Assembly: GCA_002104905.1 (NCBI GenBank)
Contig: MCFE01000656.1
Coordinates: 1 to 49,312 of the forward strand
Direction of reading: 5' to 3'
Length of the DNA: 49,312 nucleotides
Origin: Basidiobolus meristosporus CBS 931.73
Lineage: Eukaryota > Fungi > Basidiobolomycota
Positions 1-17,654 of the stretch are shown here, piece by piece; positions within the stretch are counted from its first letter, which is position 1; the number at the start of each line of letters is the position of its first letter. Below the pieces are notes generated by a model. It was not told where the DNA came from and did no database searches. It saw only the letters and a list, made by a program, of their open reading frames with translations. The translations under genes and the position numbers were made by a program.

Positions 1-734
1 TGATAGATCAGTGGCTCTGCCTCGGTCTCGCATTTGAACACATCCTCGATCAGGATTCTTGGGGTGGACTTGTCATTCCCCGCTCCTGTCACATCTCCAT
101 CGGCGACCACGAACAGCAACTTCGACTCATCATCGTATTCACTCTGGACCACCGAGTTCACGGTCTTCAGGATGACCTCTTTGCTCTCACTGTAGCATGG
201 GATGTGCAAGGCCAGGAGCTTCTTGGACTTATTGCTTGGGTCCGGATCCGGTTTACAGTTCTTCGCCTTACGTTGAACGAATATAGCAGCGATAATGTTG
301 AGAAATGTTACCATCCCGGCACATGCCAAGAAAACTATATACACGATATCCAAAAATATACAGTATGGCAGATTAACTGTCAGTATACCTCTCCCTTCAT
401 TTGCATCGCTACATATTAGCGAAGGCAAAACAAACAAGAGCATGATCATAGATATCACCAGTATTATTATCGCACGAAAATACCGAAACTTTTCCCGCCA
501 GGCTTCTCTCTTTTCTTTGGTATTCAGCCCAAATGGTATTAGCAGGGTCTTGATGAACAAGAAATCGACTACGCTATTGAGACTTATCCAGAGCTTTTGA
601 GCCTCTGGAGATGTGATAGGCTTTTCTGTTGGTGGAAGTTGATACTTTTCGTCCCATTCTACGTAGTCTTCGAAGGAGAACTTGGGTACATCGGAGAAGA
701 TGCGCTTATGTGGCGAGATGTACACTTTGCTCAT
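1..734 (-). CDS. Chitin synthase-like gene, copy 1 (5' part only; runs off the left edge)
   Basis: Open frame from ATG at 734 reads MSKVYISPHKRIFSDVPKFSFEDYVEWDEKYQLPP...KREAWREK...KKLLALHIPCYSESKEVILKTVNSVVQSEY...VADGDVTGAGNDKSTPRIL. It is colinear with copies 2 and 3 and has no intron. Bases 1-226 are identical to 2818-3043. Confidence 0.9.
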   Translation of the reverse strand, partial: MSKVYISPHKRIFSDVPKFSFEDYVEWDEKYQLPPTEKPITSPEAQKLWISLNSVVDFLFIKTLLIPFGLNTKEKREAWREKFRYFRAIIILVISMIMLLFVLPSLICSDANEGRGILTVNLPYCIFLDIVYIVFLACAGMVTFLNIIAAIFVQRKAKNCKPDPDPSNKSKKLLALHIPCYSESKEVILKTVNSVVQSEYDDESKLLFVVADGDVTGAGNDKSTPRILIEDVFKCETEAEPLIY

Positions 735-1275
735 GCTTATGATAGGAGATTTAAGTTTCGGTGAAAGATACACGTTGCTCGAAAATGATTTGCGCGGTTT
801 CTCTTCCGAACTTTCACCGGAACTGCCAACTGTTGAAGAATCCAGCATGGCACCCTAAAGCAAAGGTTTGGGGATGAGTAGAGGACTGGAGCTACAATGC
901 TACTCGCGACATTCATCACGAGAGTAGACAGGTTTTTAAGACGACAGGATCGATTATTCCGGTGGGTTGGTATTGTTGATTACTTGGACATGAAATTAAT
1001 GTACCGCATTGTATTCCTATATGGTTTAGTTATATCGTACATTTGCGATCTAGCACAGGCCAATATTAATGAAATCTCATCACATTTGTGATCCGCTACA
1101 ATCAACCTAGATTGAATTAACCAGTTGGGTTTTATCTTATTTACTGAAGATTGATCGAAAAATTATTTCTGCTTGAATCCGAAATCCTTGACACTGACCA
1201 TTATCCAGGTGGGATATAACAATCCAATATTATGCTCAGAAATTAATAAAATATATTGATTGCACAATATTTACA

Positions 1276-3548
1276 TTATGACACAATAATATGATGTGGG
1301 GTATATGTGGCTGTGCGATCAGCAATACAAACTGGATCTGGAATTTGGATCCTTATTGTGTCCTTCTCTGATGTTAGACGGGTACTGCCCCAACTAAAAT
1401 CATCCATCTTCCATAAGCTGTACAATGGGATCACTACAGCCCACAATGGAAGCCCGAAGATGAACATGAACCACCAGCAGGCTTGCGTCTTCCTTCCGGC
1501 CATCAGTGCAATGAGTCCAGGCAGACAAAACAAGACTATAGGTGAAACCAAGTGATAACCAGGTAAGGTGTGTCCACAGGCCCCAAATCGCTATGCAGCA
1601 TCCGAGTGGCAAGAAGAACGGGATAGCCGATGCCGACCATAGTTCCGACACCATCACCAGCTTCATGCTCCACCTCATCCGCCAGGTTGGAAAGGCCGGT
1701 GGGTTCACAAACAGGTCGAAGTGGTTGTGGATCAGGGAGTTGGTCCACCTTCTGCGCTGGCACAGCAACACGCTCAGCTGATCCGGAACCGTGGTGGTGC
1801 ACACCGCAGATGGGATGTACCGTGTTCTCATGTCTGTCAAATAGCGGATCACCAGGGTGCAAAGATACCGATCCTCTCCGATGGTGAGCAGATTGTGTTC
1901 CCGCATCAGCTTAGGCTCGGCCATGTAGTCTCGCATGATCCGAGGATCCAGCACCGCTGGGCGGACCTCCTTCTTCCCGGTGTCTGGGTTGACACTGTGC
2001 CTCTTGAGTCGATAGATCGTAAAGCATCCCGACAGCACCAGCACATTCGCGTAGAACGACTCGAACGACTTGAGCAGGCAGTGGGTGAGGAAGTACTCAA
2101 ACACTTGGATCATGGTGATGTAGCTCTGCGTCCGATTCTCCACCTTCGTCTCGCCACAAACCCCCGAGAGCTTCGGATCTTTCTCCAGCGCCTGGACCAG
2201 TATATCGAGCCCATCTGGCCGGATGAAAGTGTCTGCATCTGCCACCAGCACATACTCTACGTCCTTCGCATTGCATCCGACTCGCTTGAGTGAGTTGTAC
2301 ATCTCGGCAAACATCGGGCAACTGAATCGAATTTTCCTCCTTCTTAGGTATCCAGAGAGCCGGTTGATGTCCACTGTTGATGCTTTCTAAGGGTGTACTA
2401 GGCATCGAGTCATTTCCGGAGTAGTATGAAGCAACACTGTACCCGTTTCCTGGCCCAGCTCCCCAGAGTGACAACCCTTGGATATGAGCACTTGTCTGCG
2501 CAATCTCAGTGTTGCAACTACTTCCGCTATGGCTGTACTCGAAACTTCCATCTGCAAATGAATCACCATCCTCCATTGCAATCTCCTCAAGCATCTCGTC
2601 CAAGAAGAACCCATTTGCCTCGCGGAAGAAGTTGTACACCACCAACTGCGAGTCTCGCTTGGACCTGTTCCCTGGCTTCGCTGCCTCTCTCTCACTCTCC
2701 AAGCCGACCTTCACCACTAGCAGGTACTTGATCTTGCGGTCTGGCTCACCCTCGGGCGAGTAGTACCCAGTGTACACACAGGCCTTGTTTAGTCTTTGGT
2801 CGCCATGGCCCACTGACTGATAGATCAGTGGCTCTGCCTCGGTCTCGCATTTGAACACATCCTCGATCAGGATTCTTGGGGTGGACTTGTCATTCCCCGC
2901 TCCTGTCACATCTCCATCGGCGACCACGAACAGCAACTTCGACTCATCATCGTATTCACTCTGGACCACCGAGTTCACGGTCTTCAGGATGACCTCTTTG
3001 CTCTCACTGTAGCATGGGATGTGCAAGGCCAGGAGCTTCTTGGGCTTCTCTGCCGGATCCGCTGGTAGCTTATACTTTCCCACCGTTCGCTGGACAACAA
3101 TGGCGGCGATGATGTTCATCAGCATCACCCCGACCGCACAGGCCATAAAGATGATGTACACCACGTCCAAGAACATGCAATATGGCAGCTTCACAGTGAG
3201 GATTCCTGTCGGGGCATCACTTCCGCTACATATAACAAACGGCAAGACAAACAGCAGCACTATCATCACCAGCACCAAAAAGATCATGGCTCGGAAGTAC
3301 CGGATCTTCTCACGCCACGCCTCCCGCTTCTCCTTGGTGTCCAGTCCGAATGGCTTTAGTAGAGACTTGATGAACAAGATGTCAATCACACTGTTGATGG
3401 CGACCCAGACTTTTTGGGCTTTCGGTGAGGTGATCGGCTTGTCAAGTGGTGGAAGCTGATACTTCTCGTCCCATTCTACGTATTCATCAATTTGGCCTTC
3501 GCCCAGTGCATCAGATAATTTCTCGGCAAGACCCTTGGTTGTTGACAT
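1276..3548 (-). pseudogene. Chitin synthase-like gene, copy 2, split by two +1 insertions (pseudogene or sequence error)
   Basis: ORFs 2097-3548, 1400-2374 and 1276-1551 together tile the copy 3 protein. Alignment to copy 3 shows an extra T at 2381 and an extra A at 1540. The GEDRYL and QRRRW motifs are intact. Confidence 0.85.
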
Positions 3549-4171
3549 AGAAATCGCTTGGGATTAGTATAAAGATACCGGCTTCGTGAGCTCCATTTAT
3601 CATTTCTAGCGTTGCGCACTGCACATCAAAATCGAACTCATATGTTGGCCAAGATATGTCTCGGTTGAACCAAGTAAAACCTCAATCTCAAGGTTTTTCC
3701 TGGTCCTTAACTTGACAAAAACTGATTCAGTGAAAAAGCTCTGATCCCTCTTACATAATCATCGATTTTTGGCGCCACTTTTTATGATTGCCCTTATCTT
3801 GTTAACACGGTGACTAGATGGCTCCAAGGCTGAGAGTAATGCAAGTCCCTACTTGCCAATTACGTATTGAATGTCGACTCAGGCACGGTCTGACGAGGCG
3901 GATATTGTGAATGAGACTGTTTCTGAGGCATACGATGTTGGGTATGCGCTAACGCCGCCATTTCAAACAACAGATTGGTGTCAGCTACTCAAAGACAAAC
4001 GGAGTCTGAAGTATTCAGAGTTATGACTATGATTTCTTTATTGAATGCTTGCAATGCGCTATGATAATGACTTACATGAATTTTATGTGGTTGATGGATA
4101 GTTTCATATGAATTGCTTCTCTACCTAGATTAAGGTTAAGGGATGGATGACTTGTCAAGGCGATATGGGGC

Positions 4172-6466
4172 TCATTCTGGAATATTGATGGCTGTGGCTT
4201 GTGGCTCCGAGTGAGGGTCTACTTCCCTAGGCTTTATCTCTTGAACCGATTCCAGAATGGTTTTGGAATAAGTTGGACGGGTACTGCCCCAACTAAAGTC
4301 ATCCATCTTCCATAAGCTGTACAATGGGATCACTACAGCCCACAATGGAAGCCCGAAGATGAACATGAACCACCAGCAGGCTTGCGTTTTCCTTCCGGCC
4401 ATCAGTGCAATGAGTCCAGGCAGACAAAACAAGACTATGGTGAAACCAAGTGATAACCAGGTAAGGTGTGTCCACAGGCCCCAAATCGCTATGCAGCATC
4501 CGAGTGGCAAGAAGAACGGGATAGCTGATGCCGACCATAGTTCCGACACCATCACCAACTTCATGCTCCACCTCATCCGCCAGGTTGGAAAGGCCGGCGG
4601 GTTCACAAACAGGTCGAAGTGGTTGTGGATCAGGGAGTTGGTCCACCTTCTGCGCTGGCACAGCAACACGCTCAGCTGATCCGGAACCGTGGTGGTGCAC
4701 ACCGCGGATGGGATGTACCGTGTTCTCATGTCTGTCAAATAGCGGATCACCAGGGTGCAAAGATACCGATCCTCTCCGATGGTGAGCAGATTGTGTTCCC
4801 GCATCAGCTTAGGCTCGGCCATGTAGTCTCGCATGATCCGAGGATCCAGCACCGCTGGGCGGACCTCCTTCTTCCCGGTGTCTGGGTTGACACTGTGCCT
4901 CTTGAGTCGATAGATCGTAAAGCATCCCGACAGCACCAGCACATTCGCGTAGAACGACTCGAACGACTTGAGCAGGCAGTGGGTGAGGAAGTACTCAAAC
5001 ACTTGGATCATGGTGATGTAGCTCTGCGTCCGATTCTCCACCTTCGTCTCGCCACAAACCCCCGAGAGTTTCGGATCTTTCTCCAGCGCCTGGACCAGTA
5101 TATCGAGCCCATTTGGCCGGATGAAAGTGTCTGCATCTGCTACCAGCACATACTCTACGTCCTTCGCATTGCATCCGACTCGCTTGAGTGAGTTGTACAT
5201 CTCGGCAAACATCGGACAACTGAATCGAATTTTCCTCCTTCTTAGGTATCCAGAGAGCCGGTTGATGTCCACTGTTGAGCTTTCTAAGGGTGTACTAGGC
5301 ATAGAGTCATTTCCGGAGTAGTATGAAGCAACACTGTACCCGTTTCCTGGCCCAGCTCCCCAGAGTGACAACCCTTGGATATGAGCACTTGTCTGCGCAA
5401 TCTCAGTGTTGCAACTACTTCCGCTATGGCTGTACTCGAAACTTCCATCTGCAAATGAATCACCATCCTCCATTGCAATCTCCTCAAGCATCTCGTCCAA
5501 GAAGAACCCATTTGCCTCGCGGAAGAAGTTGTACACCACCAACTGCGAGTCTCGCTTGGACCTGTTCCCTGGCTTCGCTGCCTCTCTCTCACTCTCCAAG
5601 CCGACCTTCACCACTAGCAGGTACTTGATCTTGCGGTCTGGCTCGCCCTCGGGCGAGTAGTACCCGGTGTACACACAGGCCTTGTTTAGTCTTTGGTCGC
5701 CATGGCCCACTGACTGATAGATCAGTGGCTCTGCCTCGGTCTCGCATTTGAACACATCCTCGATCAGGATTCTTGGGGTGGACTTGTCATTCCCCGCTCC
5801 TGTCACATCCCCATCGGCGACCACGAACAGCAACTTCGACTCATCATCGTATTCACTCTGGACCACCGAGTTCACGGTCTTCAGGATGACCTCTTTGCTC
5901 TCACTGTAGCATGGGATGTGCAAGGCCAGGAGCTTCTTGGGCTTCTCTGCCGGATCCGCTGGCAGCTTATACTTTCCCACCGTTCGCTGGACAACAATGG
6001 CGGCGATGATGTTCATCAGCATCACCCCGACCGCACAGGCCATAAAGATGATGTACACCACGTCCAAGAACATGCAATATGGCAGCTTCACAGTGAGGAT
6101 TCCTGTCGGGGCATCACTTCCGCTACATATAACAAACGGCAAGACAAACAGCAGCACTATCATCACCAGCACCAAAAAGATCATGGCTCGGAAGTACCGG
6201 ATCTTCTCACGCCACGCCTCCCGCTTCTCCTTGGTGTCCAGTCCGAATGGCTTTAGTAGAGACTTGATGAACAAGATGTCAATCACACTGTTGATGGCGA
6301 CCCAGACTTTTTGGGCTTTCGGTGAGGTGATCGGCTTGTCAAGTGGTGGAAGCTGATACTTTTCGTCCCACTCCACGTAGTCGTCCTCCCAAATTAGATT
6401 CTCTTGGCTCGGCGACGGGTAGCTATTGTGGGTTAAATAGCTGTCGGAGATATCCATCCCGGTCAT
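4172..6466 (-). CDS. Chitin synthase-like protein, copy 3 (764 aa, intronless, GT2 / Chitin_synth_2 type, division-2-like)
   Basis: Motifs REAWREK, VADGDVTGAGNDKSTP, KPGNRSKRDSQ, ADADT, CGET, IQVFEY, GEDRYL, QRRRW and WKMDDFSWGSTR. Hydrophobic segments lie N- and C-terminal to the catalytic region. Confidence 0.95.
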   Translation of the reverse strand: MTGMDISDSYLTHNSYPSPSQENLIWEDDYVEWDEKYQLPPLDKPITSPKAQKVWVAINSVIDILFIKSLLKPFGLDTKEKREAWREKIRYFRAMIFLVLVMIVLLFVLPFVICSGSDAPTGILTVKLPYCMFLDVVYIIFMACAVGVMLMNIIAAIVVQRTVGKYKLPADPAEKPKKLLALHIPCYSESKEVILKTVNSVVQSEYDDESKLLFVVADGDVTGAGNDKSTPRILIEDVFKCETEAEPLIYQSVGHGDQRLNKACVYTGYYSPEGEPDRKIKYLLVVKVGLESEREAAKPGNRSKRDSQLVVYNFFREANGFFLDEMLEEIAMEDGDSFADGSFEYSHSGSSCNTEIAQTSAHIQGLSLWGAGPGNGYSVASYYSGNDSMPSTPLESSTVDINRLSGYLRRRKIRFSCPMFAEMYNSLKRVGCNAKDVEYVLVADADTFIRPNGLDILVQALEKDPKLSGVCGETKVENRTQSYITMIQVFEYFLTHCLLKSFESFYANVLVLSGCFTIYRLKRHSVNPDTGKKEVRPAVLDPRIMRDYMAEPKLMREHNLLTIGEDRYLCTLVIRYLTDMRTRYIPSAVCTTTVPDQLSVLLCQRRRWTNSLIHNHFDLFVNPPAFPTWRMRWSMKLVMVSELWSASAIPFFLPLGCCIAIWGLWTHLTWLSLGFTIVLFCLPGLIALMAGRKTQACWWFMFIFGLPLWAVVIPLYSLWKMDDFSWGSTRPTYSKTILESVQEIKPREVDPHSEPQATAINIPE

Positions 6467-7326: not shown

Positions 7327-8755
7327 TCACAATTTACTTCTGGGTTGGCGAGAGAGTAATACTTCGTCGCGTAACTTCTCATCCAAAAAGAAATCCTCCA
7401 ACAATTGATCTTGGGGAATGCCTGGAGTAACAGAGTATTGATCGAAGTCGGTCATCCCATTTTCTCTCAACACCAACTCGTCAATACAGAATTTGCCCCT
7501 AATGAGCATCGGAATCAGTAACAATATACCGTCGAAAAAAGCTGTGGACTTACGTAAATTCGGATGATTTCTTGGTAAGAATGGCGTAAGCCGCATCGGC
7601 CATGATTTCCGGCTTCCTGTGAAATATGGTTTTGAGTACCCTGAACTTCTCTCAACCAATGGGAGAATTACCTAGTTTGATCAAGAGCGCCCTGGAAGCT
7701 CCCTGTATCAATGAGTTACTACCACCGCCTATCACCGCCTACCACCATCTCAACCCATCCACTTACCTATCACTTGGAGGGCAGCAGTTTTGATGGCTGT
7801 AAATGGCCACAATGCATTGACACCAATGCCATATTGGCGAAGCTCTTCGGACATCCCTGCAAATATCCAGGTCAGCACAAACCTACTGCACCTAGCTGCC
7901 ACCCTAGCTGCCGAATACTCAGCTCAGCTTACCAAGTACACACAATGACATTCCATATCTAAAACAATGACAAATAGGTCAATTACAGGCCAATAACCGA
8001 TGAGGCTGAAAATACAAAGCACATACTTGGCCATCGTATATGCAACATGTGGGGCAAACCAATTCGGATCAAGTGAGAGTGGGGGAGAAATGTTCAAAAT
8101 ATGAGGGTTCTCACTTTTCTTCAAGTAGCGGGATGGCATACTATGGCGTAGTATACGCATTGTCAATAATCGTGCCATATGAATGAACTTTGTGGCGTAC
8201 CTTCGAAACTAGCCAAGTGCCACGAGCATTGATTTGATTCATGAGGTCATATTTTTTAAGCGTGGTACTCTCTGTATTGGTCAGACTGATGGCGGAGGCT
8301 ATTCCATTATGAGTGAGTGTCCATGATGGATGGTGCTTGGTCACAGAGATCTAACCGTTATTTACAACAATATCAACTGCGCCGAATCGCTTGACGGTAT
8401 CCTCGAAGGCTTTGATGACTTGGGATTCGTCTCGAATATCACATTGAATCGGGATAGCTGCACCACCGGCTTGCTCGATTTCTTTGGATACAGTGAATAT
8501 GGTTCCTGGAAGCTGCTGAGTGGTTAGACTTCGTGTCAAGAGATTTTCTCTCAGCAATCTGCTTCACCTTGGGATGCGGTTCCACAGTCTTGGCGACGAC
8601 CGCAATGTTTGCACCATCCTTGGCGGCTTTTAACGCGATCGAGCGGCCAATACCTCTAGATACCCTCATCAATACCGTCATCTGAACCATTCTGGATAAA
8701 ACGAAAACAACCTGGAGGCGCCGGTGATGAACAGCGTTTTTCCGCGAAGTGACAT
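7327..8755 (-). CDS. HSDL2: Hydroxysteroid dehydrogenase-like protein 2 (HSDL2-type SDR), peroxisomal
   Basis: Spliced product MSLRGKTLFITGASRGIGRSIALKAAKDGANIAVVAKT...NNASAI...NARGT...HVAYTMAKYGMS...KPEIMADAAY...FCIDELVLRENGMTDFDQY. It ends in SKL (PTS1 signal). Confidence 0.9.
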
Positions 8756-9139: not shown

Positions 9140-10486
9140 ATGTCTGATTTAAGCGATTCGAATCCAGCCCTGCTTGAAGCAAACCAGGTTCGCCACAGAA
9201 CCCCTAGCCCCAAACCTTCGCGTTTGGACCTTGGTGCCAGCTCTAGTGAGGATGTCTCTGAGGCAAGCGCTCAAGACACTTCTTATCCTGTATCTATGGA
9301 TTCGGCGACCCCTCCGTTACCTGGTACTTTTAAAGTAGGCGTCTCTCACGATCGTAATAGGCGTTTCCGTAGAACAATGGAGGTAAAGAAAGATCCTATT
9401 TTGATTACTCGTGTACTTTCCCTTAAATACCCGCTGCTGTAGGATGCACATGCGTACATTCATGATTTTGGGGGCGTGGAGGGACAGGGGTACTTCGCGA
9501 TTTTCGATGGACATGCTGGTAAAAAAGCGGCAGAATGGTGTGGAGAACATCTCCATGAGGTTAGCAACGTTCTTTCACCCCAATGATATATAATGTATCT
9601 ACCGGCATGGTTTATTCAACACGGCCCTAGATATTTTTAGACACCATGAAAGCCAATCCGTCCGCACCTATCCCTGAAATATTTCACAAAACGTTCTTGG
9701 AAACAGACAAGCAGCTGGAGAGCAACGAGAATCATTCTGGCTGTACGGCCATCACAACTTTTCTACGTGTTGATCAACAGCCATCGGACGCGGACGAGAA
9801 GTCCCAAAGCCCCACGGTAAGCCTATTCACTTCATGAGCTCTCGCCATATCAGGCTAAACATACCAAAACCAAAGCGTATTCTGTGCGCTGCAAATGTCG
9901 GCGATGCCAGAGCGGTGTTGTGGTAAGCATTTACCTATGCAAAATACGCCACCAACTCTATTAATCATTTGAACCAGCCGCAATGGAAAGGCGATTCGTC
10001 TCTCCTACGATCACAAAGGCTCAGACCCCCAAGAGGTTAAGCGTATTGTAAGTGCAGGTGGCTTTATTATCAATAACCGCGTAAACGGTAAGCTTCATAA
10101 TGAGAGTCGATCTATGCCTGCACGTGTCTGAGATGAGCGGTATATGTATCTAGGGGTTATTGCCGTTACCAGATCTCTAGGAGACGGAACTATGAAAGAG
10201 TTTATCGTTGGAAGCCCATACACAACGGAAACTACCCTCAGTAGCCAGGACCCCTTTTTTATTTTGGCCTGCGATGGGGTAAGCAAGTCACACTTACCTT
10301 CGACTCATTTAGCTGCACACGACTGACATTTCTTAGCTGTGGGATGTTTGCAGTGACCAGGAAGCTGTGGATCTGGTTGCCGACATTGAAGACCCTCAAG
10401 AGGCGAGCGACAAGCTGCTCGATTACGCACTTCGCAATTTCAGTACCGACAATCTCAGCGTGATGGTTGTCCGTCTTTACCACTAG
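9140..10486 (+). CDS. PTC1: PP2C protein phosphatase (Ptc1-like)
   Basis: Exons encode [59 protein letters not shown] and [10 protein letters not shown]. Confidence 0.92.
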
Positions 10487-12788: not shown

Positions 12789-13308
12789 ATGGGTCGCATG
12801 CACACACCTGGGTACGTCTATCTATTGACGAAGTATACATCCATTCCAACACACTAACGTTCTCGTGTATTATAGTAAGGGCATTGCCTCTTCTGCCCTC
12901 CCCTATCGTCGTACTCCTCCTTCCTGGGTCAAGTCCACCCCTGAGGAAGTTTGCGAACACATCTGCAAACTCGCCAAGAAGGGTATGACTCCTTCCCAAA
13001 TCGGTGTTCTTCTCAGAGATTCCCACGGTATCCCCCAAGTTAGAAGCGTTACCGGTAACAAGGTTCTTCGTATCTTGAAGAGCAACGGTTTGGCTCCTGA
13101 GATCCCCGAGGATCTTTACCACCTCATCAAGAAGGCTGTTGCCGTTCGTAAGCATTTGGAACGTAACAGAAAGGATGCTGACTCCAAGTACCGTTTGATT
13201 CTTATCGAATCCAGAATTCACAGATTGGCTCGTTACTACAAGACTGCCGGTCAATTGGCTCCTAACTGGAAGTATGAATCTTCCACTGCTTCTGCCTTGG
13301 TCGCTTAA
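12789..13308 (+). CDS. RPS13: 40S ribosomal protein S13 (uS15)
   Basis: MGRMHTPG, an intron, then [17 protein letters not shown]...[21 protein letters not shown]. Confidence 0.98.
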
Positions 13309-13726: not shown

Positions 13727-16700
13727 ATGGTTTCTTTCCAAGACGTCATAGAGATCGCTCCTTATCCACACAAGTTCGACTATACCGAATCCTACTGTGG
13801 CGGCGGTTTCTCGAAAGCCTCGGACGCACAATGGTTTTATAGATACGACACCAATTTACTCGAGGTCAGAGACGTAGATTCGTGTCACAGCGAGGTTTTT
13901 GCTTCGTTAGATGTTAAAAGATTGGCAGAGGATGAGTTGGAGGAGGTGAGAAAGCGCGTAACTTCATTCTCTACTCGTTCGATTTCTAACTGCTCCTATC
14001 GCCCCGTTGCTAGCTGGACATTGCCTGCGTAACTGATGCTCTAATTAACGAGGAGCAATACTTGATCGTGGGAACCAAGGATGTCTTGTCTTCTACCTGC
14101 AAGATGCATCTTTTCAATCCACTCACCTTAGAGATTACCACGCTTCCTTTCTCATTCACAGGAAATATTTCAGCGATGGCGATCTCAAAAGATTTCGCAT
14201 ACGAGGTAAATAGCCAGAATTCCTCGTTAACTATCGGCGATCTAATCTTGATGTTCACTTGTAGTCCTCGGTTTATGGGACCTGCGTCTGCAACCTTTTA
14301 GTGATCGGGCTAACGGACTCCAAGGTTCTACTTTACCAGTTCTTCTCTTATCCTAACGGTGGTCAATGCATAGACTTTGAGGTGATTATACCTTGTTACA
14401 GAATGAGGGGAAATGCAAACAGTTATCTAATTTTTATTTCTTGCAGACCACATATCGCGAGTGCTCAATTCCGAAGATAGGGATGGTAAAGAGTTTGTTG
14501 AAGAATTGTTTCTGCGGCATTTCATTGACTCTAGTCATGTTAGATTACCGCCCTAGCTGTATATACCCCTAGCCAGTTTGAAGATACTGAGAGCTACTCG
14601 CCAGTAATTATCGTTGGTAGCGGTACAGGGAAGATCGAAGCCTTCCGGTACACCGGCGAACGGAAGAGCGAAATCAAACCTATTATCAAGATATCCGGCC
14701 AAGATCACCCAGGTAAGCCAACGGCTTATCCACGCGGCCATATCTGAATTATCTAACCTCTCAGCAAACAAAGGGGCCGTGACTAGTTTGGTTATCAAAT
14801 CGATTGACGGAGGACAGTTCAAACATGGCTCTACCATATTTCTCTTTGCTGGATATGGCACGTTAGGCAAAGCCACCAAGAGGTAATCTCTTTTCGAGAA
14901 ATCACATTCACAGTTACTTACATTCGGCTCACTGATAGCCCCTCGAGACCAGTCGTGGACATATATCAGATTAGGCTGTCTACTTGCGAATACAGGCAGC
15001 TAGGAAAGGTCAAGAGCAACATCAAAGCCTTGGACCAGTTTTCAGGCGGTATCCCACAGGCGGTCTCCTGCGTAGAAGGTAGTGTATAGTAGATTTGTAT
15101 GCACATATGGTTGCGGTCATTCACCCCTTGCTGTCTCAGAAAATGACTGCTATTATCTCATCTCCTCGTTCCTCAATCGAATGAGCAATAAGCAGATCAG
15201 ATCGGAATTGGTGGTGTCCCGCATCCACGGAAGTAGAATAGAGGAAGTACTGAGAGAAGATATCGGCTCAAGCTACGCCGAACTTTTATTGGTAAGAGGC
15301 AAGATGGTGCGCCTCCATATTTACGACAGCATTTAACCAATGTTTTCCAGGATATCTTCCCGCAAAAAGGCTCGTTGGAATGTTCAATGCTCTTTTTGAA
15401 CAAGATTGGCATCTATGTAGGCCTTTCGGACATTAAGGGCGAAAACATGCTCATATCTGACATGGTGGACTACCCAGAGTTCGACAGATGGTTCGATCTT
15501 CATCCCGATAGCTTCCCCTACTCTGCAAAGGCCATCAGTCAGATCTGCTCCATCCGCGACAGAGAAGATGGCATTTTGTTTGTTGACCACCTGCTGGAAT
15601 TCGCTGGCCTCCAGGTGGGCTCCTTGTACCCACCCCAAAATGCCACCCAGTTGAAGGAGCTTGTGTCAGCTGTCCTTGATTGTGAGCTAGATATCTTAAA
15701 GAAGCACTGCATTCTGTACTACTTCCTCAAGGATTACCAAGACGCTACGCTTTCCGAGCGCTATGCCAGTCATTATCTTATACCCTCTCACTTCCAAAGT
15801 CTATTGAATGGGTATTGGTGCCTTGACCACGATGACCATAGAGCTGCTCTAACCTACCTTGCCGATCCTTCAGTCGAGGCTGACTGGGCCAGCAAGATCG
15901 TCAAATCTTTCTACAAAAACGGGTATTCAAGCGAGGCGTTGGAATTCATTCAAATGACACATCCCCTACTGGAGGAAGAGGAGGACGTTTTGCTTCAGAT
16001 GAACATTCTACTCAAGTGTGACCTTGCTCAGGCCTTTGCATTCCAACGTTCTGTGGAGGAAGCTGATCTTCAGGGAGATCTACTACATTTATTATTCGAG
16101 TTTTGCTTCTCGGAAGAAGCATATCAGCAAGCCTTGGGCCGACTCCTGCATATTCCTCTCCTCCCAAGAGAGGAGGCCTACATGATCGAGGTGTGCTCGA
16201 GTGCAAAGAACCACATTGCTCAAGACTACTTGGTCATGTACTACATTCACCATGGAAGGTACGTAGAGGCTATCAAAGCTCACACTAGAGCCAAGTACGA
16301 GGAATCTTATGCTGGTGGCTCTGTTCGAAAATCGGTAGTCGATCGCGAGGTCATCATTGACAATCTAAAGCTTGTGCTGCCCGAGATCCAAAGGAATATC
16401 TTGGCCCTTGAACTTGCCCAGATTGTCCCTGGATATCAGGCCGACTCTCTCGAAGATGATGATATTGAAATGGTTGATATCAACGAGAGAGGAAGCACCA
16501 TTCTCTCAAAGCCCCAGGTGGTGGAGTCTATTTCAACTCAAATTAGCAGCCAAGTTGCACCACTCTCTGCCGCCAAGTCGATCAGACAAACCCTTCCTCA
16601 GTTGAATAGTGAGGACGGTGTGGCCAGCCCACAAACCGTGCTTATCAAAGCACTGATGAAGCAAATGATACGTAAGAAAGCCACCATCCCAGCCTCGCCT

Positions 16701-17654
16701 TTGAAATCGTCCTCCGTGCACGCCAGCTCTCCATTTGCCAAGTCCGTCTCATCAGCCACTCCAAAGAAAGAAAAGCAGGTGCCACGCTCTGTCCAGGCCT
16801 CCAGCCCGTTTTCCGGGCCTCCCTCTACCCCTCAACCGGAAGTCATTCAAAGAATTCGCGAGTCAACCTCCCCTCAACTCGCCGGCAATGAATCCACCGG
16901 TATGGACACCCCGTCCAACTTCAAGAACAGCTCTCGCCAAGTCAGATTTTCGAATATCGCTCTTATTGACACCGACGATGAGGACAGCCCCTACCAAATC
17001 GCTCTTTCACCTGAGGCTATAGGCAGCAGCTCTCCCGCCCGCAAGCCAATGAGAAAGACACCAGCCCGCTCCAAGCGGTATTCTATCGGAAGCCGCGGGA
17101 TCGAGTTCACACCTCAAAAGCCACCCATTGCTCCAGACAGTGTTATTCGATCGGCACGAAGCACCACTAGAACCAGCCGCAGCAAGCTCTCCCTGAACCC
17201 TCAAGAGTCTACCCCCTCCACTGATCACTCACGCGTAAGAAAGGTGCAGCAGTCCCCACAAAGCAGTGAGACTAGAAGCGAGGTGAGCGATGATGAGCCT
17301 GATAACCTGCCCCTTCCCCGTGAAAAGAGAAGCAAGCCATCAGTGAGAACAGGCACTGCTGGATCCATTCTTCGCAAAAGCGGTAGACGTAATTCCGTAG
17401 ATGCCTCAGACACTCCTGGTGGCTATCCGAGACCAGATTTCTCCAAGGAGTCGGAAGACGACTCGGTCATGAGCGAAAATGCCAACGACGAGGTGTCTCT
17501 GGTTGAGGAAACGCGCGAGGTGGTAGAAATAAGTCAGACCATTGAAACCGAAGTGAAATCTCCCAGACCCGGCCGTAAATTGCGTGCGCAACTACCTGGT
17601 ATGCCTAGAAGATCACCCAGACACAATCGCATGGATATGAACGAGGATGATTGA
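13727..17654 (+). CDS. ELYS-like nucleoporin with a beta-strand-rich N-terminus and a long disordered C-terminus
   Basis: The last exon contains the ELYS helical signature (LYPP...KHCILYYFLKDY...FQSLLNGYWCLDH). Eight upstream exons can be joined in phase from ATG 13727. Confidence 0.8.

What the first reader, a model, noticed from the sequence alone, without database searches (positions are those of the whole stretch)
1..6466. Tandem array of intronless, minimal chitin synthase-like genes with no cytochrome-b5-like or myosin domain
Seen: at least three head-to-tail copies at about 2.8-2.9 kb spacing. All are intronless, whereas every recognisable housekeeping gene in the window has introns. 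After REAWREK and the first TM, only a ~20-residue loop (ICSGSDAPTGILTVKLPYC) precedes the next TM and the GT2 domain. Established: REAWREK, GKRDSQ and WKMDDFSWG-type motifs mark division-2 fungal CHS (classes IV/V/VII), which normally carry a long cytochrome-b5-like-containing region at that position. Compact CHS-like genes are also reported from bacteria and large DNA viruses. Inference: this may be a distinct, lineage-expanded short CHS clade derived by retroposition, horizontal transfer or domain deletion, possibly specialised for a particular cell type or polymer.
Basis: partly seen in the sequence, partly recalled or inferred. Interest (0 to 1): 0.85.

Follow-up and report, generated by a model that had tools for sequence, protein, structure and literature searches.

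The report
Minimal chitin synthase gene array, Basidiobolus
The fungus Basidiobolus carries a tandem array of intron-free genes for a stripped-down chitin synthase that belongs to a rare, old and unstudied branch of the family shared with a few water moulds and chytrids; it is a modestly interesting variant rather than a new kind of enzyme.

Summary
Window 1-6466 carries three head-to-tail copies on the minus strand, spaced 2817 and about 2898 bp, of a chitin synthase gene without introns. Copy 3 is an intact 764-aa ORF. Copy 2 is broken by two 1-nt insertions in this assembly. Copy 1 is cut by the window edge. The protein has no CHS4/cytochrome-b5-like, myosin or DEK_C domain: a ~24-residue loop joins TM1 to TM2, and the GT2 domain follows directly.

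The organism is a Basidiobolus species. The protein falls in a strongly supported clade outside superclasses IV and V. That clade is not specific to Basidiobolus: Allomyces, Spizellomycetales and a few uncultured eukaryotes share the same minimal architecture. The short form is therefore old, not a recent deletion, retroposition or transfer.

All catalytic motifs are intact and selection is purifying. The cores of the three copies are near-identical while their ends are unrelated, which points to gene conversion.

Short-read contigs do not show copy 2's frameshifts, so they may be assembly errors.

I could not test whether the clade equals the described chlorovirus-like class (CV/VIb).

The scan had already noted the mosaic copies on this same stretch (s1-212483).

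The parts
1..734 (-). Copy 1, N-terminal 244 codons (MSKVYISPH...); the rest lies left of the window
   Evidence: Open frame from the ATG at 734. Positions 1 to about 215 are about 100% identical to copies 2 and 3. Positions from about 215 to 630 are only about 65% identical.
1276..3548 (-). Copy 2, full length but read in three frames in this assembly
   Evidence: ORFs 2097-3548 and 1400-2374 plus a third frame to the stop at 1276. Compared with copy 3 there are 18 synonymous and 3 non-synonymous changes.
2381..2381 (-). Extra base in copy 2 (codon 396 of the copy 3 numbering); first frameshift
   Evidence: not in a homopolymer. The short-read contig X2 record 10 (2334-2607) matches every copy 2 base, including the copy-2 allele at 2406, but lacks this base.
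1540..1540 (-). Extra base in copy 2 (codon 676); second frameshift
   Evidence: It is absent from the only contig that covers it, but that contig mixes alleles of copies 2 and 3, so this is ambiguous.
4172..6466 (-). Copy 3, intact single-exon gene, 764 aa
   Evidence: It is colinear with the single-exon orthologues P0001 (810 aa in 2433 nt) and P0002 (798 aa in 2397 nt).
4272..6385 (-). Homogenised core of copy 3, equal to copy 2 at 1373-3488 (codons 28-731); the flanks are unrelated
   Evidence: 99.0% identity over 2110 nt with abrupt ends.
6125..6214 (-). REAWREK juxtamembrane helix and TM1 (residues 85-114)
5969..6124 (-). Short extracytosolic loop with the conserved Cys114 and Cys131, then TM2 (residues 115-166). 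In classes IV and V this loop holds the CHS4/b5-like domain.
5222..5455 (-). Basidiobolus-specific low-complexity insert within the GT2 domain (residues 338-415), predicted disordered
   Evidence: Absent from all non-Basidiobolus clade members. pLDDT is below 50. It is conserved as protein among species, with omega about 0.1 where measurable. The stored gene call P0004 wrongly splices it out.
4286..5137 (-). Second half of the catalytic domain with D444xD446, E565-D566-R567, Q604RRRW608 and S725-W726-G727
   Evidence: These columns are invariant or nearly invariant (at least 90%) in the 86-sequence alignment A3. pLDDT is above 90.

Best explanation
The region is the right-hand end of a tandem array in a Basidiobolus species. 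The array has at least three members and is cut by the window edge. Its genes are single-exon and encode a minimal chitin synthase.

Architecture (shown): a cytosolic N-terminus of about 85 residues, the division-2 'AWREK' helix running into TM1, a 24-residue outside loop with two conserved cysteines, TM2, a GT-A catalytic domain that follows directly, and a C-terminal bundle of membrane helices.

Function (inferred): it most likely works as a processive membrane glycosyltransferase. It would bind UDP-GlcNAc in the cytosol through D218 and D444xD446, use D566 of the EDR motif as base, hold the acceptor with W608 of QRRRW, and push the growing beta-1,4-GlcNAc chain through its own channel.

Evolution (shown): the protein belongs to an old, rare clade that stands outside superclasses IV and V and never carries the b5-like domain. 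The clade is shared with Allomyces, Spizellomycetales and a few uncultured eukaryotes. Within Basidiobolus the clade split into two branches before the sampled species diverged: a single-copy locus (P0001/P0002) and the array type seen here. The array copies keep near-identical catalytic cores but have unrelated N-terminal tails, C-terminal tails and flanks.

Inferred from that pattern: gene conversion homogenises the cores, and the differing ends may give the copies different regulation or targeting. Enzyme activity, product and expression are also inferred, not shown.
For: Identity and motifs:
- Pfam Chitin_synth_2 at 402 bits.
- All catalytic columns are invariant in an 86-sequence alignment.
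- AlphaFold model with pTM 0.79 and GT domain pLDDT above 90. Foldseek matches solved hyaluronan and chitin synthases.
- The best shape match is a 534-aa giant-virus CHS cluster: TM 0.93 by target, 525 residues at 2.5 A, covering residues 82-735.

Organism and orthologues.

Clade:
- Exhaustive HMMER search, names, domains, shared architecture.
- ML tree 100/100, 419-sequence FastTree 1.0, AU test.

Selection:
- dN is 0.08-0.2 while dS is saturated between species.
- 18 synonymous to 3 non-synonymous changes between copies 2 and 3.

Conversion mosaic.

The duplication is real in independent short-read data. Contigs bridge the core-to-flank junctions, and core contigs have about 1.5-2 times the depth of flank contigs.
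Against: - No RNA data were available, so expression is unknown.
- Activity and product are untested.
- The Chitin_synth_2 score is half that of canonical class IV enzymes (402 against 775-920 bits).
- Signature residues near the active site differ from the IV/V consensus (LSGCF for LPGCF, RRRWTNSL for RRRWINST), so altered specificity is possible.
- Copy 2 is out of frame in the assembly.
- The tree is unrooted and long branches are involved; the tool flagged the Spizellomyces branch.
Confidence: 0.7

Rival explanations
1. The clade is simply the early-fungal part of the already described chlorovirus-like class (CV of Goncalves et al. 2016 = class VIb of Li et al. 2016 = FgChs8). In that case the finding is a new member of a known short class.
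For: - Goncalves et al. list exactly one CV member in Spizellomyces punctatus and say CV genes sit beside a polysaccharide deacetylase (PMC5122149).
- The Spizellomyces clade member P0124 lies head-to-head with a Chitin_bind_1 + Polysacc_deac_1 gene.
- By language-model features, the nearest clusters to both copy 3 and P0124 are CS2-only Ascomycota clusters; for copy 3 the third-nearest is a Nucleocytoviricota cluster.
- The best shape match is that viral cluster.
Against: - Apart from the clade's own members, all of the 150 best hits in the exhaustive search fell outside the clade in the 419-sequence tree; where annotated they are class IV, V or diatom type, but most carry no name or domain annotation.
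- Foldseek identity to ESV-1-84 and a viral 551-aa protein that I take to be a chlorovirus CHS is only 15-16%.
- Three IMG/VR scans found no viral relative.
- No UNGD or deacetylase lies next to the Basidiobolus genes.
- I could not confirm which Spizellomyces gene the paper calls CV.
Confidence: 0.3
2. Copy 2 is a true pseudogene: the array is decaying and only some copies work.
For: There are two independent 1-nt insertions, neither in a homopolymer.
Against: - 18 of the 21 substitutions against copy 3 are synonymous, and no stop lies inside any in-frame segment.
- Short-read contigs from the probable source sample show neither insertion.
- One of those contigs carries the copy-2-specific allele 24 nt from the 2381 site yet lacks the insertion.
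Confidence: 0.3
3. The enzyme makes something other than chitin, for example chito-oligosaccharides, a hyaluronan-like polymer or a mixed polymer.
For: - The minimal architecture is that of class I hyaluronan synthases, which are the top solved-structure matches.
- The catalytic domain is divergent, with clade-specific substitutions beside conserved motifs.
Against: - Sequence similarity to hyaluronan synthase is marginal (E=5e-4) against 2e-12 for chitin synthases.
- QRRRW and (S)WGxTR are of the chitin synthase type.
- No sugar-nucleotide dehydrogenase gene lies nearby.
Confidence: 0.15
4. The short form arose recently in Basidiobolus, either by retroposition of a class IV/V mRNA with loss of the loop domain or by transfer from a virus or bacterium.
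For: - The genes are intronless in an intron-rich genome.
- Basidiobolus is known for acquiring foreign genes (my own knowledge, not checked here).
Against: - The AU test rejects a class IV origin.
- The same architecture occurs in Allomyces, chytrids and marine eukaryotes.
- No poly(A) relic is present.
- No viral relative was found.
- The only two 'bacterial' hits carry a b5-like region and group with diatom-type CHS.
Confidence: 0.05

Closest known systems
Fungal division-2 chitin synthases, superclass IV (ScChs3 / A. nidulans ChsD type)
   Same: It shares the AWREK-TM1-Cys motif, PCYSE, GNRxKRDSQ, DADT, GEDRYL, QRRRW and DDFSWG. It has a Chitin_synth_2 catalytic domain with 35-39% identity over the C-terminal 315 residues.
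   Different: It has no CHS4/b5-like domain: the TM1-TM2 loop is 24 aa instead of about 220 aa, and TM2 to GT is about 20 aa instead of about 125 aa. It has half the Pfam score, is intronless, and lies outside the class in trees.
Chlorovirus-like / phaeovirus-like CHS classes (CV = VIb, FgChs8; ESV = VIc)
   Same: It has the same CS2-only minimal architecture. The best shape match is a Nucleocytoviricota CHS cluster (TM 0.93 by target). A clade member in Spizellomyces is paired with a polysaccharide deacetylase, as reported for CV genes (PMC5122149).
   Different: Sequence identity to viral representatives is low. No UNGD or deacetylase neighbour is present in Basidiobolus. No viral relative was retrieved. 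Membership could not be tested by phylogeny.
Class I hyaluronan synthases (Chlorella virus HAS, Xenopus HAS1)
   Same: It has the same topology: two N-terminal TM helices, a GT-A domain and a C-terminal TM bundle. These are the top Foldseek hits among solved structures.
   Different: Sequence similarity is marginal, and the motifs are of the chitin synthase type.
recCHS / classical class VI (division 3; AfChsD, BcChs6)
   Same: It is also short and carries only the CS2 domain.
   Different: Reported distribution is Pezizomycotina plus single Mortierella, Batrachochytrium and Plasmodiophora genes (PMC5122149). No such sequence came near the top of the exhaustive search. This was not tested by tree.

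Membership tests
Chitin synthase (GT2, Pfam PF03142 Chitin_synth_2) | Profile match above the curated cut-off | tested here: met
   402 bits against a cut-off of 27.
Chitin synthase (GT2, Pfam PF03142 Chitin_synth_2) | Catalytic motifs: D (DG), DxD, EDR, QxxRW, SWG | tested here: met
   D218, D444/D446, E565-D566-R567, Q604-W608 and W726 are invariant and G727 is nearly invariant (at least 90%) in 86 aligned sequences.
Chitin synthase (GT2, Pfam PF03142 Chitin_synth_2) | GT-A fold with a membrane channel bundle | tested here: met
   AlphaFold pTM 0.79. Foldseek probability 1.0 to solved CHS and HAS structures.
Chitin synthase (GT2, Pfam PF03142 Chitin_synth_2) | Incorporates UDP-GlcNAc into chitin | not testable with these tools
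   Needs a bench assay.
Division 2 superclass IV | CHS4 / cytochrome-b5-like domain in the TM1-TM2 loop | tested here: not met
   No PF22997 or PF00173 hit at E<=1. The loop is 24 aa. Class IV controls do hit.
Division 2 superclass IV | Groups with class IV in phylogeny | tested here: not met
   It is separate at 100/100. The AU test rejects the grouping, p 2e-73.
Division 2 superclass V (classes V/VII) | Myosin head, Cyt-b5 and DEK_C domains; groups with class V | tested here: not met
   No such domains. Class V is a separate clade at 99/99.
CV class (= VIb, chlorovirus-like, FgChs8) | CS2-only minimal architecture | tested here: met
CV class (= VIb, chlorovirus-like, FgChs8) | Gene clustered with UDP-GlcNAc 6-dehydrogenase and a polysaccharide deacetylase | tested here: not met
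   Neither is in the window nor at the B. meristosporus and B. ranarum loci. A deacetylase is present only beside the Spizellomyces relative.
CV class (= VIb, chlorovirus-like, FgChs8) | Groups with chlorovirus CHS and FGSG_06550 in phylogeny | tested here: inconclusive
   Reference sequences could not be fetched. Indirect signals conflict.
recCHS / class VI (division 3) | Groups with AfChsD-type proteins; 'recombined' catalytic region | not tested
   No reference sequences were in reach. No extra member joined the clade in the 419-sequence tree.
Class I hyaluronan synthase | Sequence membership in the HAS family | tested here: not met
   Only E=4.8e-4 over 80 residues to Xenopus HAS1, against 2e-12 to chitin synthases.

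The most novel reading that the evidence does not exclude
The clade is the surviving pre-b5 form of fungal division-2 chitin synthase. On this reading it is sister to all b5-bearing classes (IV, V/VII and the diatom type), keeps the hyaluronan-synthase-like minimal layout from before the b5-like domain was inserted into the TM1-TM2 loop, and may be the cellular stock from which giant-virus chitin synthases were taken. The midpoint root falls on exactly this branch, but no outgroup could be added.
Probability: 0.25. Interest if true: 0.6.

Novelty: new variant of a known kind. Interest (0 to 1): 0.4.

Why it matters
Published schemes leave many early-fungal CS2-only chitin synthases as 'others' or 'unclassified' (PMC4734345, PMC5353729). 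This result defines one such group by architecture, signature motifs and a well-supported tree. The group has only about eight 50%-identity clusters among 1.84 billion representatives.

If the group roots as sister to classes IV and V, it shows what division-2 enzymes looked like before they gained the b5-like domain. It would also offer a small, intron-free enzyme of about 670 ordered residues for structural and biochemical work on division 2, for which my sequence search of the PDB found no solved structure.

The array also shows concerted evolution of catalytic cores beside free-running regulatory ends.

It does not reveal a new enzyme type.

Tried and rejected
- Viral origin. Three IMG/VR scans found no relative: one with the clade alignment, one with a general catalytic alignment and one with the Spizellomyces protein.
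- Bacterial origin. The GTDB scan gave two MAG contigs, but their proteins carry a b5-like region and group with diatom-type CHS.
- Placing CV, ESV and recCHS references in the tree.
  - The second and third homologue searches returned only class IV/V-type proteins, because of the word index.
  - The stored copy of the CHS databank supplement of PMC5122149 is cut before those classes and holds none of the clade motifs.
- Rooting. No division 1, metazoan or HAS sequence was available by reference.
- Expression. No RNA run holds the stretch. The runs found are DNA contigs, because the intergenic DNA is covered.
- Synteny. The window is not syntenic with the P0001/P0002 locus.
- Retroposition hallmarks. 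There is no poly(A) tract 3' of the copies.
- Genome-wide paralogue count. The findings index gave nothing by sequence.
Full report
**What is there**

The first 6.5 kb of the window hold three direct repeats on the minus strand, with start-to-start spacings of 2817 and 2897-2899 bp.

- Copy 3 (4172-6466) is a single 764-aa ORF.
- Copy 2 (1276-3548) aligns with copy 3 at 99.0% over 2110 nt. It has two extra single bases, at window 2381 and 1540, that shift the frame twice.
- Copy 1 (1-734) is cut by the window edge. Its first 244 codons are open.

Copy 3 hits Pfam Chitin_synth_2 at 402 bits. It hits no Cyt-b5, CHS4, Myosin_head or DEK_C model, even at E<=1.

**Organism and orthologues**

The closest proteins are from Basidiobolus:
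- B. meristosporus P0001, 810 aa, 77% identity.
- B. ranarum P0002, 798 aa, 75%; P0003, 83%; and P0006, 85%.

The window therefore comes from another Basidiobolus species or strain.

P0001 and P0002 are single-exon genes: 2433 nt and 2397 nt, which is protein length plus the stop. Each is single-copy at one syntenic locus, RPL22e - PPR - kexin-like S8 - CHS - sulfate permease. The window shares nothing with that locus except the CHS.

The two closer B. ranarum sequences lie on contigs of 6.4 kb and 2.0 kb. The second contig is one open frame from end to end. That is what a near-identical array looks like in a short-read assembly.

The ML tree splits the Basidiobolus proteins into a single-copy branch (P0001+P0002, 99/88) and an array branch (window, P0003, L004; 98/92). 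The duplication therefore predates these species.

**Architecture**

The AlphaFold model was built from an 86-sequence alignment (mean pLDDT 78.9, pTM 0.79). It shows the following:
- a disordered N-terminus;
- a long helix at residues 79-114 (AWREK plus TM1);
- a short loop;
- a helix at 129-166 (TM2);
- the first strand of the GT-A fold at residue 179;
- a disordered stretch at 340-410;
- the second half of the catalytic domain at pLDDT above 90;
- four C-terminal membrane helices.

There is no room for, and no sign of, a b5-like domain.

In class IV proteins the same AWREK-TM1-Cys element is followed by a loop of about 220 residues that contains the CHS4 domain. Then come the second TM and about 125 more residues before the catalytic domain.

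The disordered stretch is an insert found only in Basidiobolus. It is conserved at the protein level among species, with omega about 0.1 where dS is measurable. The stored gene model P0004 wrongly removes it as an intron.

**Is it a working enzyme gene?**

All catalytic columns are invariant or nearly invariant (at least 90%) across 86 aligned division-2 sequences: D218, D444xD446, E565-D566-R567, Q604RRRW608 and W726-G727.

Between species dN is 0.08-0.2 while synonymous sites are saturated.

Between copies 2 and 3 there are 18 synonymous changes and 3 replacements.

This is strong purifying selection. Activity, product and expression remain inferred, and no RNA run was available.

**Relatives beyond Basidiobolus**

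I ran an exhaustive HMMER search of 1.84 billion cluster representatives. After the Basidiobolus sequences, only five stood above a flat plateau:
- Allomyces P0121, 461 bits;
- three metagenomic proteins, P0122, P0123 and P0125;
- Spizellomyces punctatus SPPG_08656, P0124.

P0125's cluster includes a protein on a 347-kb TARA marine scaffold with eukaryote-like neighbours.

The plateau, at about 290-330 bits, mixes class IV-length proteins with proteins of 1700-2400 aa, the length of class V/VII myosin-CHS. The query is therefore about equally far from both superclasses.

All five proteins above the plateau are CS2-only, with similarly low Pfam scores. They share the same AWREK-TM1-Cys...Cys-TM2-LHIPCYSE layout and clade-specific wording: KPGNRxKRDSQL, VLVLSGCF, HEHNLLTIGEDRYLS, QRRRWTNSLIH. 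The Allomyces and TARA genes are single-exon too.

**Phylogeny**

- A quick IQ-TREE run on 85 catalytic regions put all 14 short proteins on one side of a branch with SH-aLRT 100.
- A FastTree of all 419 collected sequences gave a 22-member clade at 1.0 and added one more metagenomic member, P0215.
- A careful run (48 sequences, 548 columns, LG+C20 PMSF) gave four clean groups:
  - short clade, 100/100;
  - class IV, 100/99;
  - class V type, 99/99;
  - a non-fungal b5-bearing group, 100/96.
- In that tree Spizellomycetales branch first within the short clade. Basidiobolus is sister to Allomyces plus the environmental sequences (93/82).
- Forcing Basidiobolus together with class IV costs 140 log-likelihood units (AU p 2e-73).

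Two caveats apply. The tree is unrooted, and the tool flags the long Spizellomyces branch. The shared architecture and motifs are independent support for the grouping.

**Is the clade already named?**

- Goncalves et al. (PMC5122149) divide division 2 into superclasses IV and V plus two fast-evolving virus-like classes, CV and ESV. They treat classical class VI as 'recCHS'.
- Li et al. (PMC4734345) call the CV class VIb (FGSG_06550 is their class VIb gene and is listed as class CV in PMC5122149) and describe a further short class VIc. They leave some early-fungal genes as 'others'.
- Liu et al. (PMC5353729) mention unclassified CS2-only enzymes in early fungi.

For a link to CV:
- Goncalves et al. 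count one CV gene in S. punctatus and say CV genes sit beside a polysaccharide deacetylase.
- P0124 is head-to-head with a chitin-binding deacetylase gene.
- By language-model features, copy 3 and P0124 are both nearest to CS2-only Ascomycota clusters; for copy 3 the third-nearest is a giant-virus cluster.
- That viral cluster is the best shape match (TM 0.93 by target).

Against a link to CV:
- Apart from the clade's own members, all of the best 150 HMMER hits fell outside the clade in the 419-sequence tree. Where annotated they are class IV, V or diatom type, but most carry no name or domain annotation.
- Foldseek identity to ESV-1-84 and to a viral 551-aa protein that I take to be a chlorovirus CHS is 15-16%.
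- No viral relative was retrieved from IMG/VR.
- No UNGD or deacetylase lies near the Basidiobolus genes.

I could not obtain CV, ESV or recCHS sequences by reference, so this stays open. I put it at about 0.3.

**The array itself**

Copies 2 and 3 are 99% identical from codon 28 to codon 731, and unrelated outside that, including the first 27 codons, the C-terminal tails and the spacers.

Copy 1 is identical to both from the start of the catalytic domain leftwards (window 1 to about 215). It is only about 65% identical across the N-terminal tail and both TM helices.

Sharp identity boundaries at different places in different pairs are the signature of gene conversion, not of one recent duplication.

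Short-read contigs from the probable source sample support this:
- They bridge the core-flank junctions.
- They give core contigs about 1.5-2 times the depth of flank contigs.
- They include one contig in which the core continues into a third, different 3' tail.

The array is therefore real and has at least three distinct ends.

The same contigs show neither of copy 2's extra bases. One of them carries copy 2's own allele at 2406, 24 nt from the 2381 site, and still lacks the insertion. The contigs mix alleles of the copies and may drop variants. I therefore treat copy 2 as 'possibly intact', with about 0.3 that it is a true pseudogene.

- Recent domain deletion and recent retroposition are disfavoured. 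The clade's wide though patchy distribution, the stable syntenic orthologues and the missing poly(A) relics all argue against them.
- A canonical class IV CHS gene of B. meristosporus does contain introns. Intronlessness is therefore a trait of the clade, shared with Allomyces and the TARA gene.
- Bacterial origin found no support. The only two hits among 185,579 species genomes are MAG contigs whose 824-843-aa proteins carry AWREK plus a b5-like region and group with diatom-type CHS.

**Verdict**

The genes encode a minimal chitin synthase of the division-2 lineage, from a rare old clade, arranged as a gene-converting tandem array.

It is a new variant of a known kind. It is worth a proper rooted phylogeny and one biochemical test, but it is not a new class of system. 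Interest 0.4.

Noticed in passing
L007:7662-12673: The Spizellomyces punctatus short-clade CHS (SPPG_08656) lies head-to-head with a gene carrying Chitin_bind_1 + Polysacc_deac_1. This looks like a chitin synthase / chitin deacetylase pair.
   Followed up: partly
L006:8001-11619: On a 347-kb TARA marine scaffold, the single-exon short-clade CHS sits 600 bp upstream of a GH20 hexosaminidase gene. The organism is unknown; its neighbours look eukaryotic.
   Followed up: no
L010:348-2879 and L011:516-2990: Two MAG contigs labelled Planctomycetaceae and Candidatus Colwellbacteria encode 843-aa and 824-aa eukaryote-type chitin synthases with QAWREK/QAFREK, a TM and a cytochrome-b5-like region. They group with diatom-type CHS (FastTree 0.995-1.0). 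They are probably mis-binned eukaryotic or giant-virus DNA, or a transfer.
   Followed up: partly
window:48209-49270: A Ty1/copia-type fragment (RVT_2 plus retroviral SH3-like domain) lies on the minus strand, at the end of a low-GC stretch (37-39% GC at 44-48 kb).
   Followed up: no
window:1382 and 3619, 4270, 6392, 6421: A short-read contig matches the shared core and then runs for 255 nt into a 3' tail unlike copy 2's. This indicates a further copy. Two runs of one sample disagree at four unique-flank positions, which suggests alleles or additional near-identical copies.
   Followed up: partly
window:1276-6466: The stored gene models for this array are wrong. P0004 starts at an internal Met and splices out the in-frame low-complexity insert. 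P0005 bridges copy 2's frameshifts with invented introns.
   Followed up: yes
window:6467-15400: The upstream neighbours are ordinary intron-split genes: short-chain dehydrogenase fragments at about 8350-8690, a PP2C-like fragment at about 10144-10326, ribosomal protein S13 at 12865-13308 and ELYS at 15375-17654. These identifications rest on reading the ORF translations (only ELYS has a Pfam hit). There is no cell-wall gene cluster around the array.
   Followed up: partly
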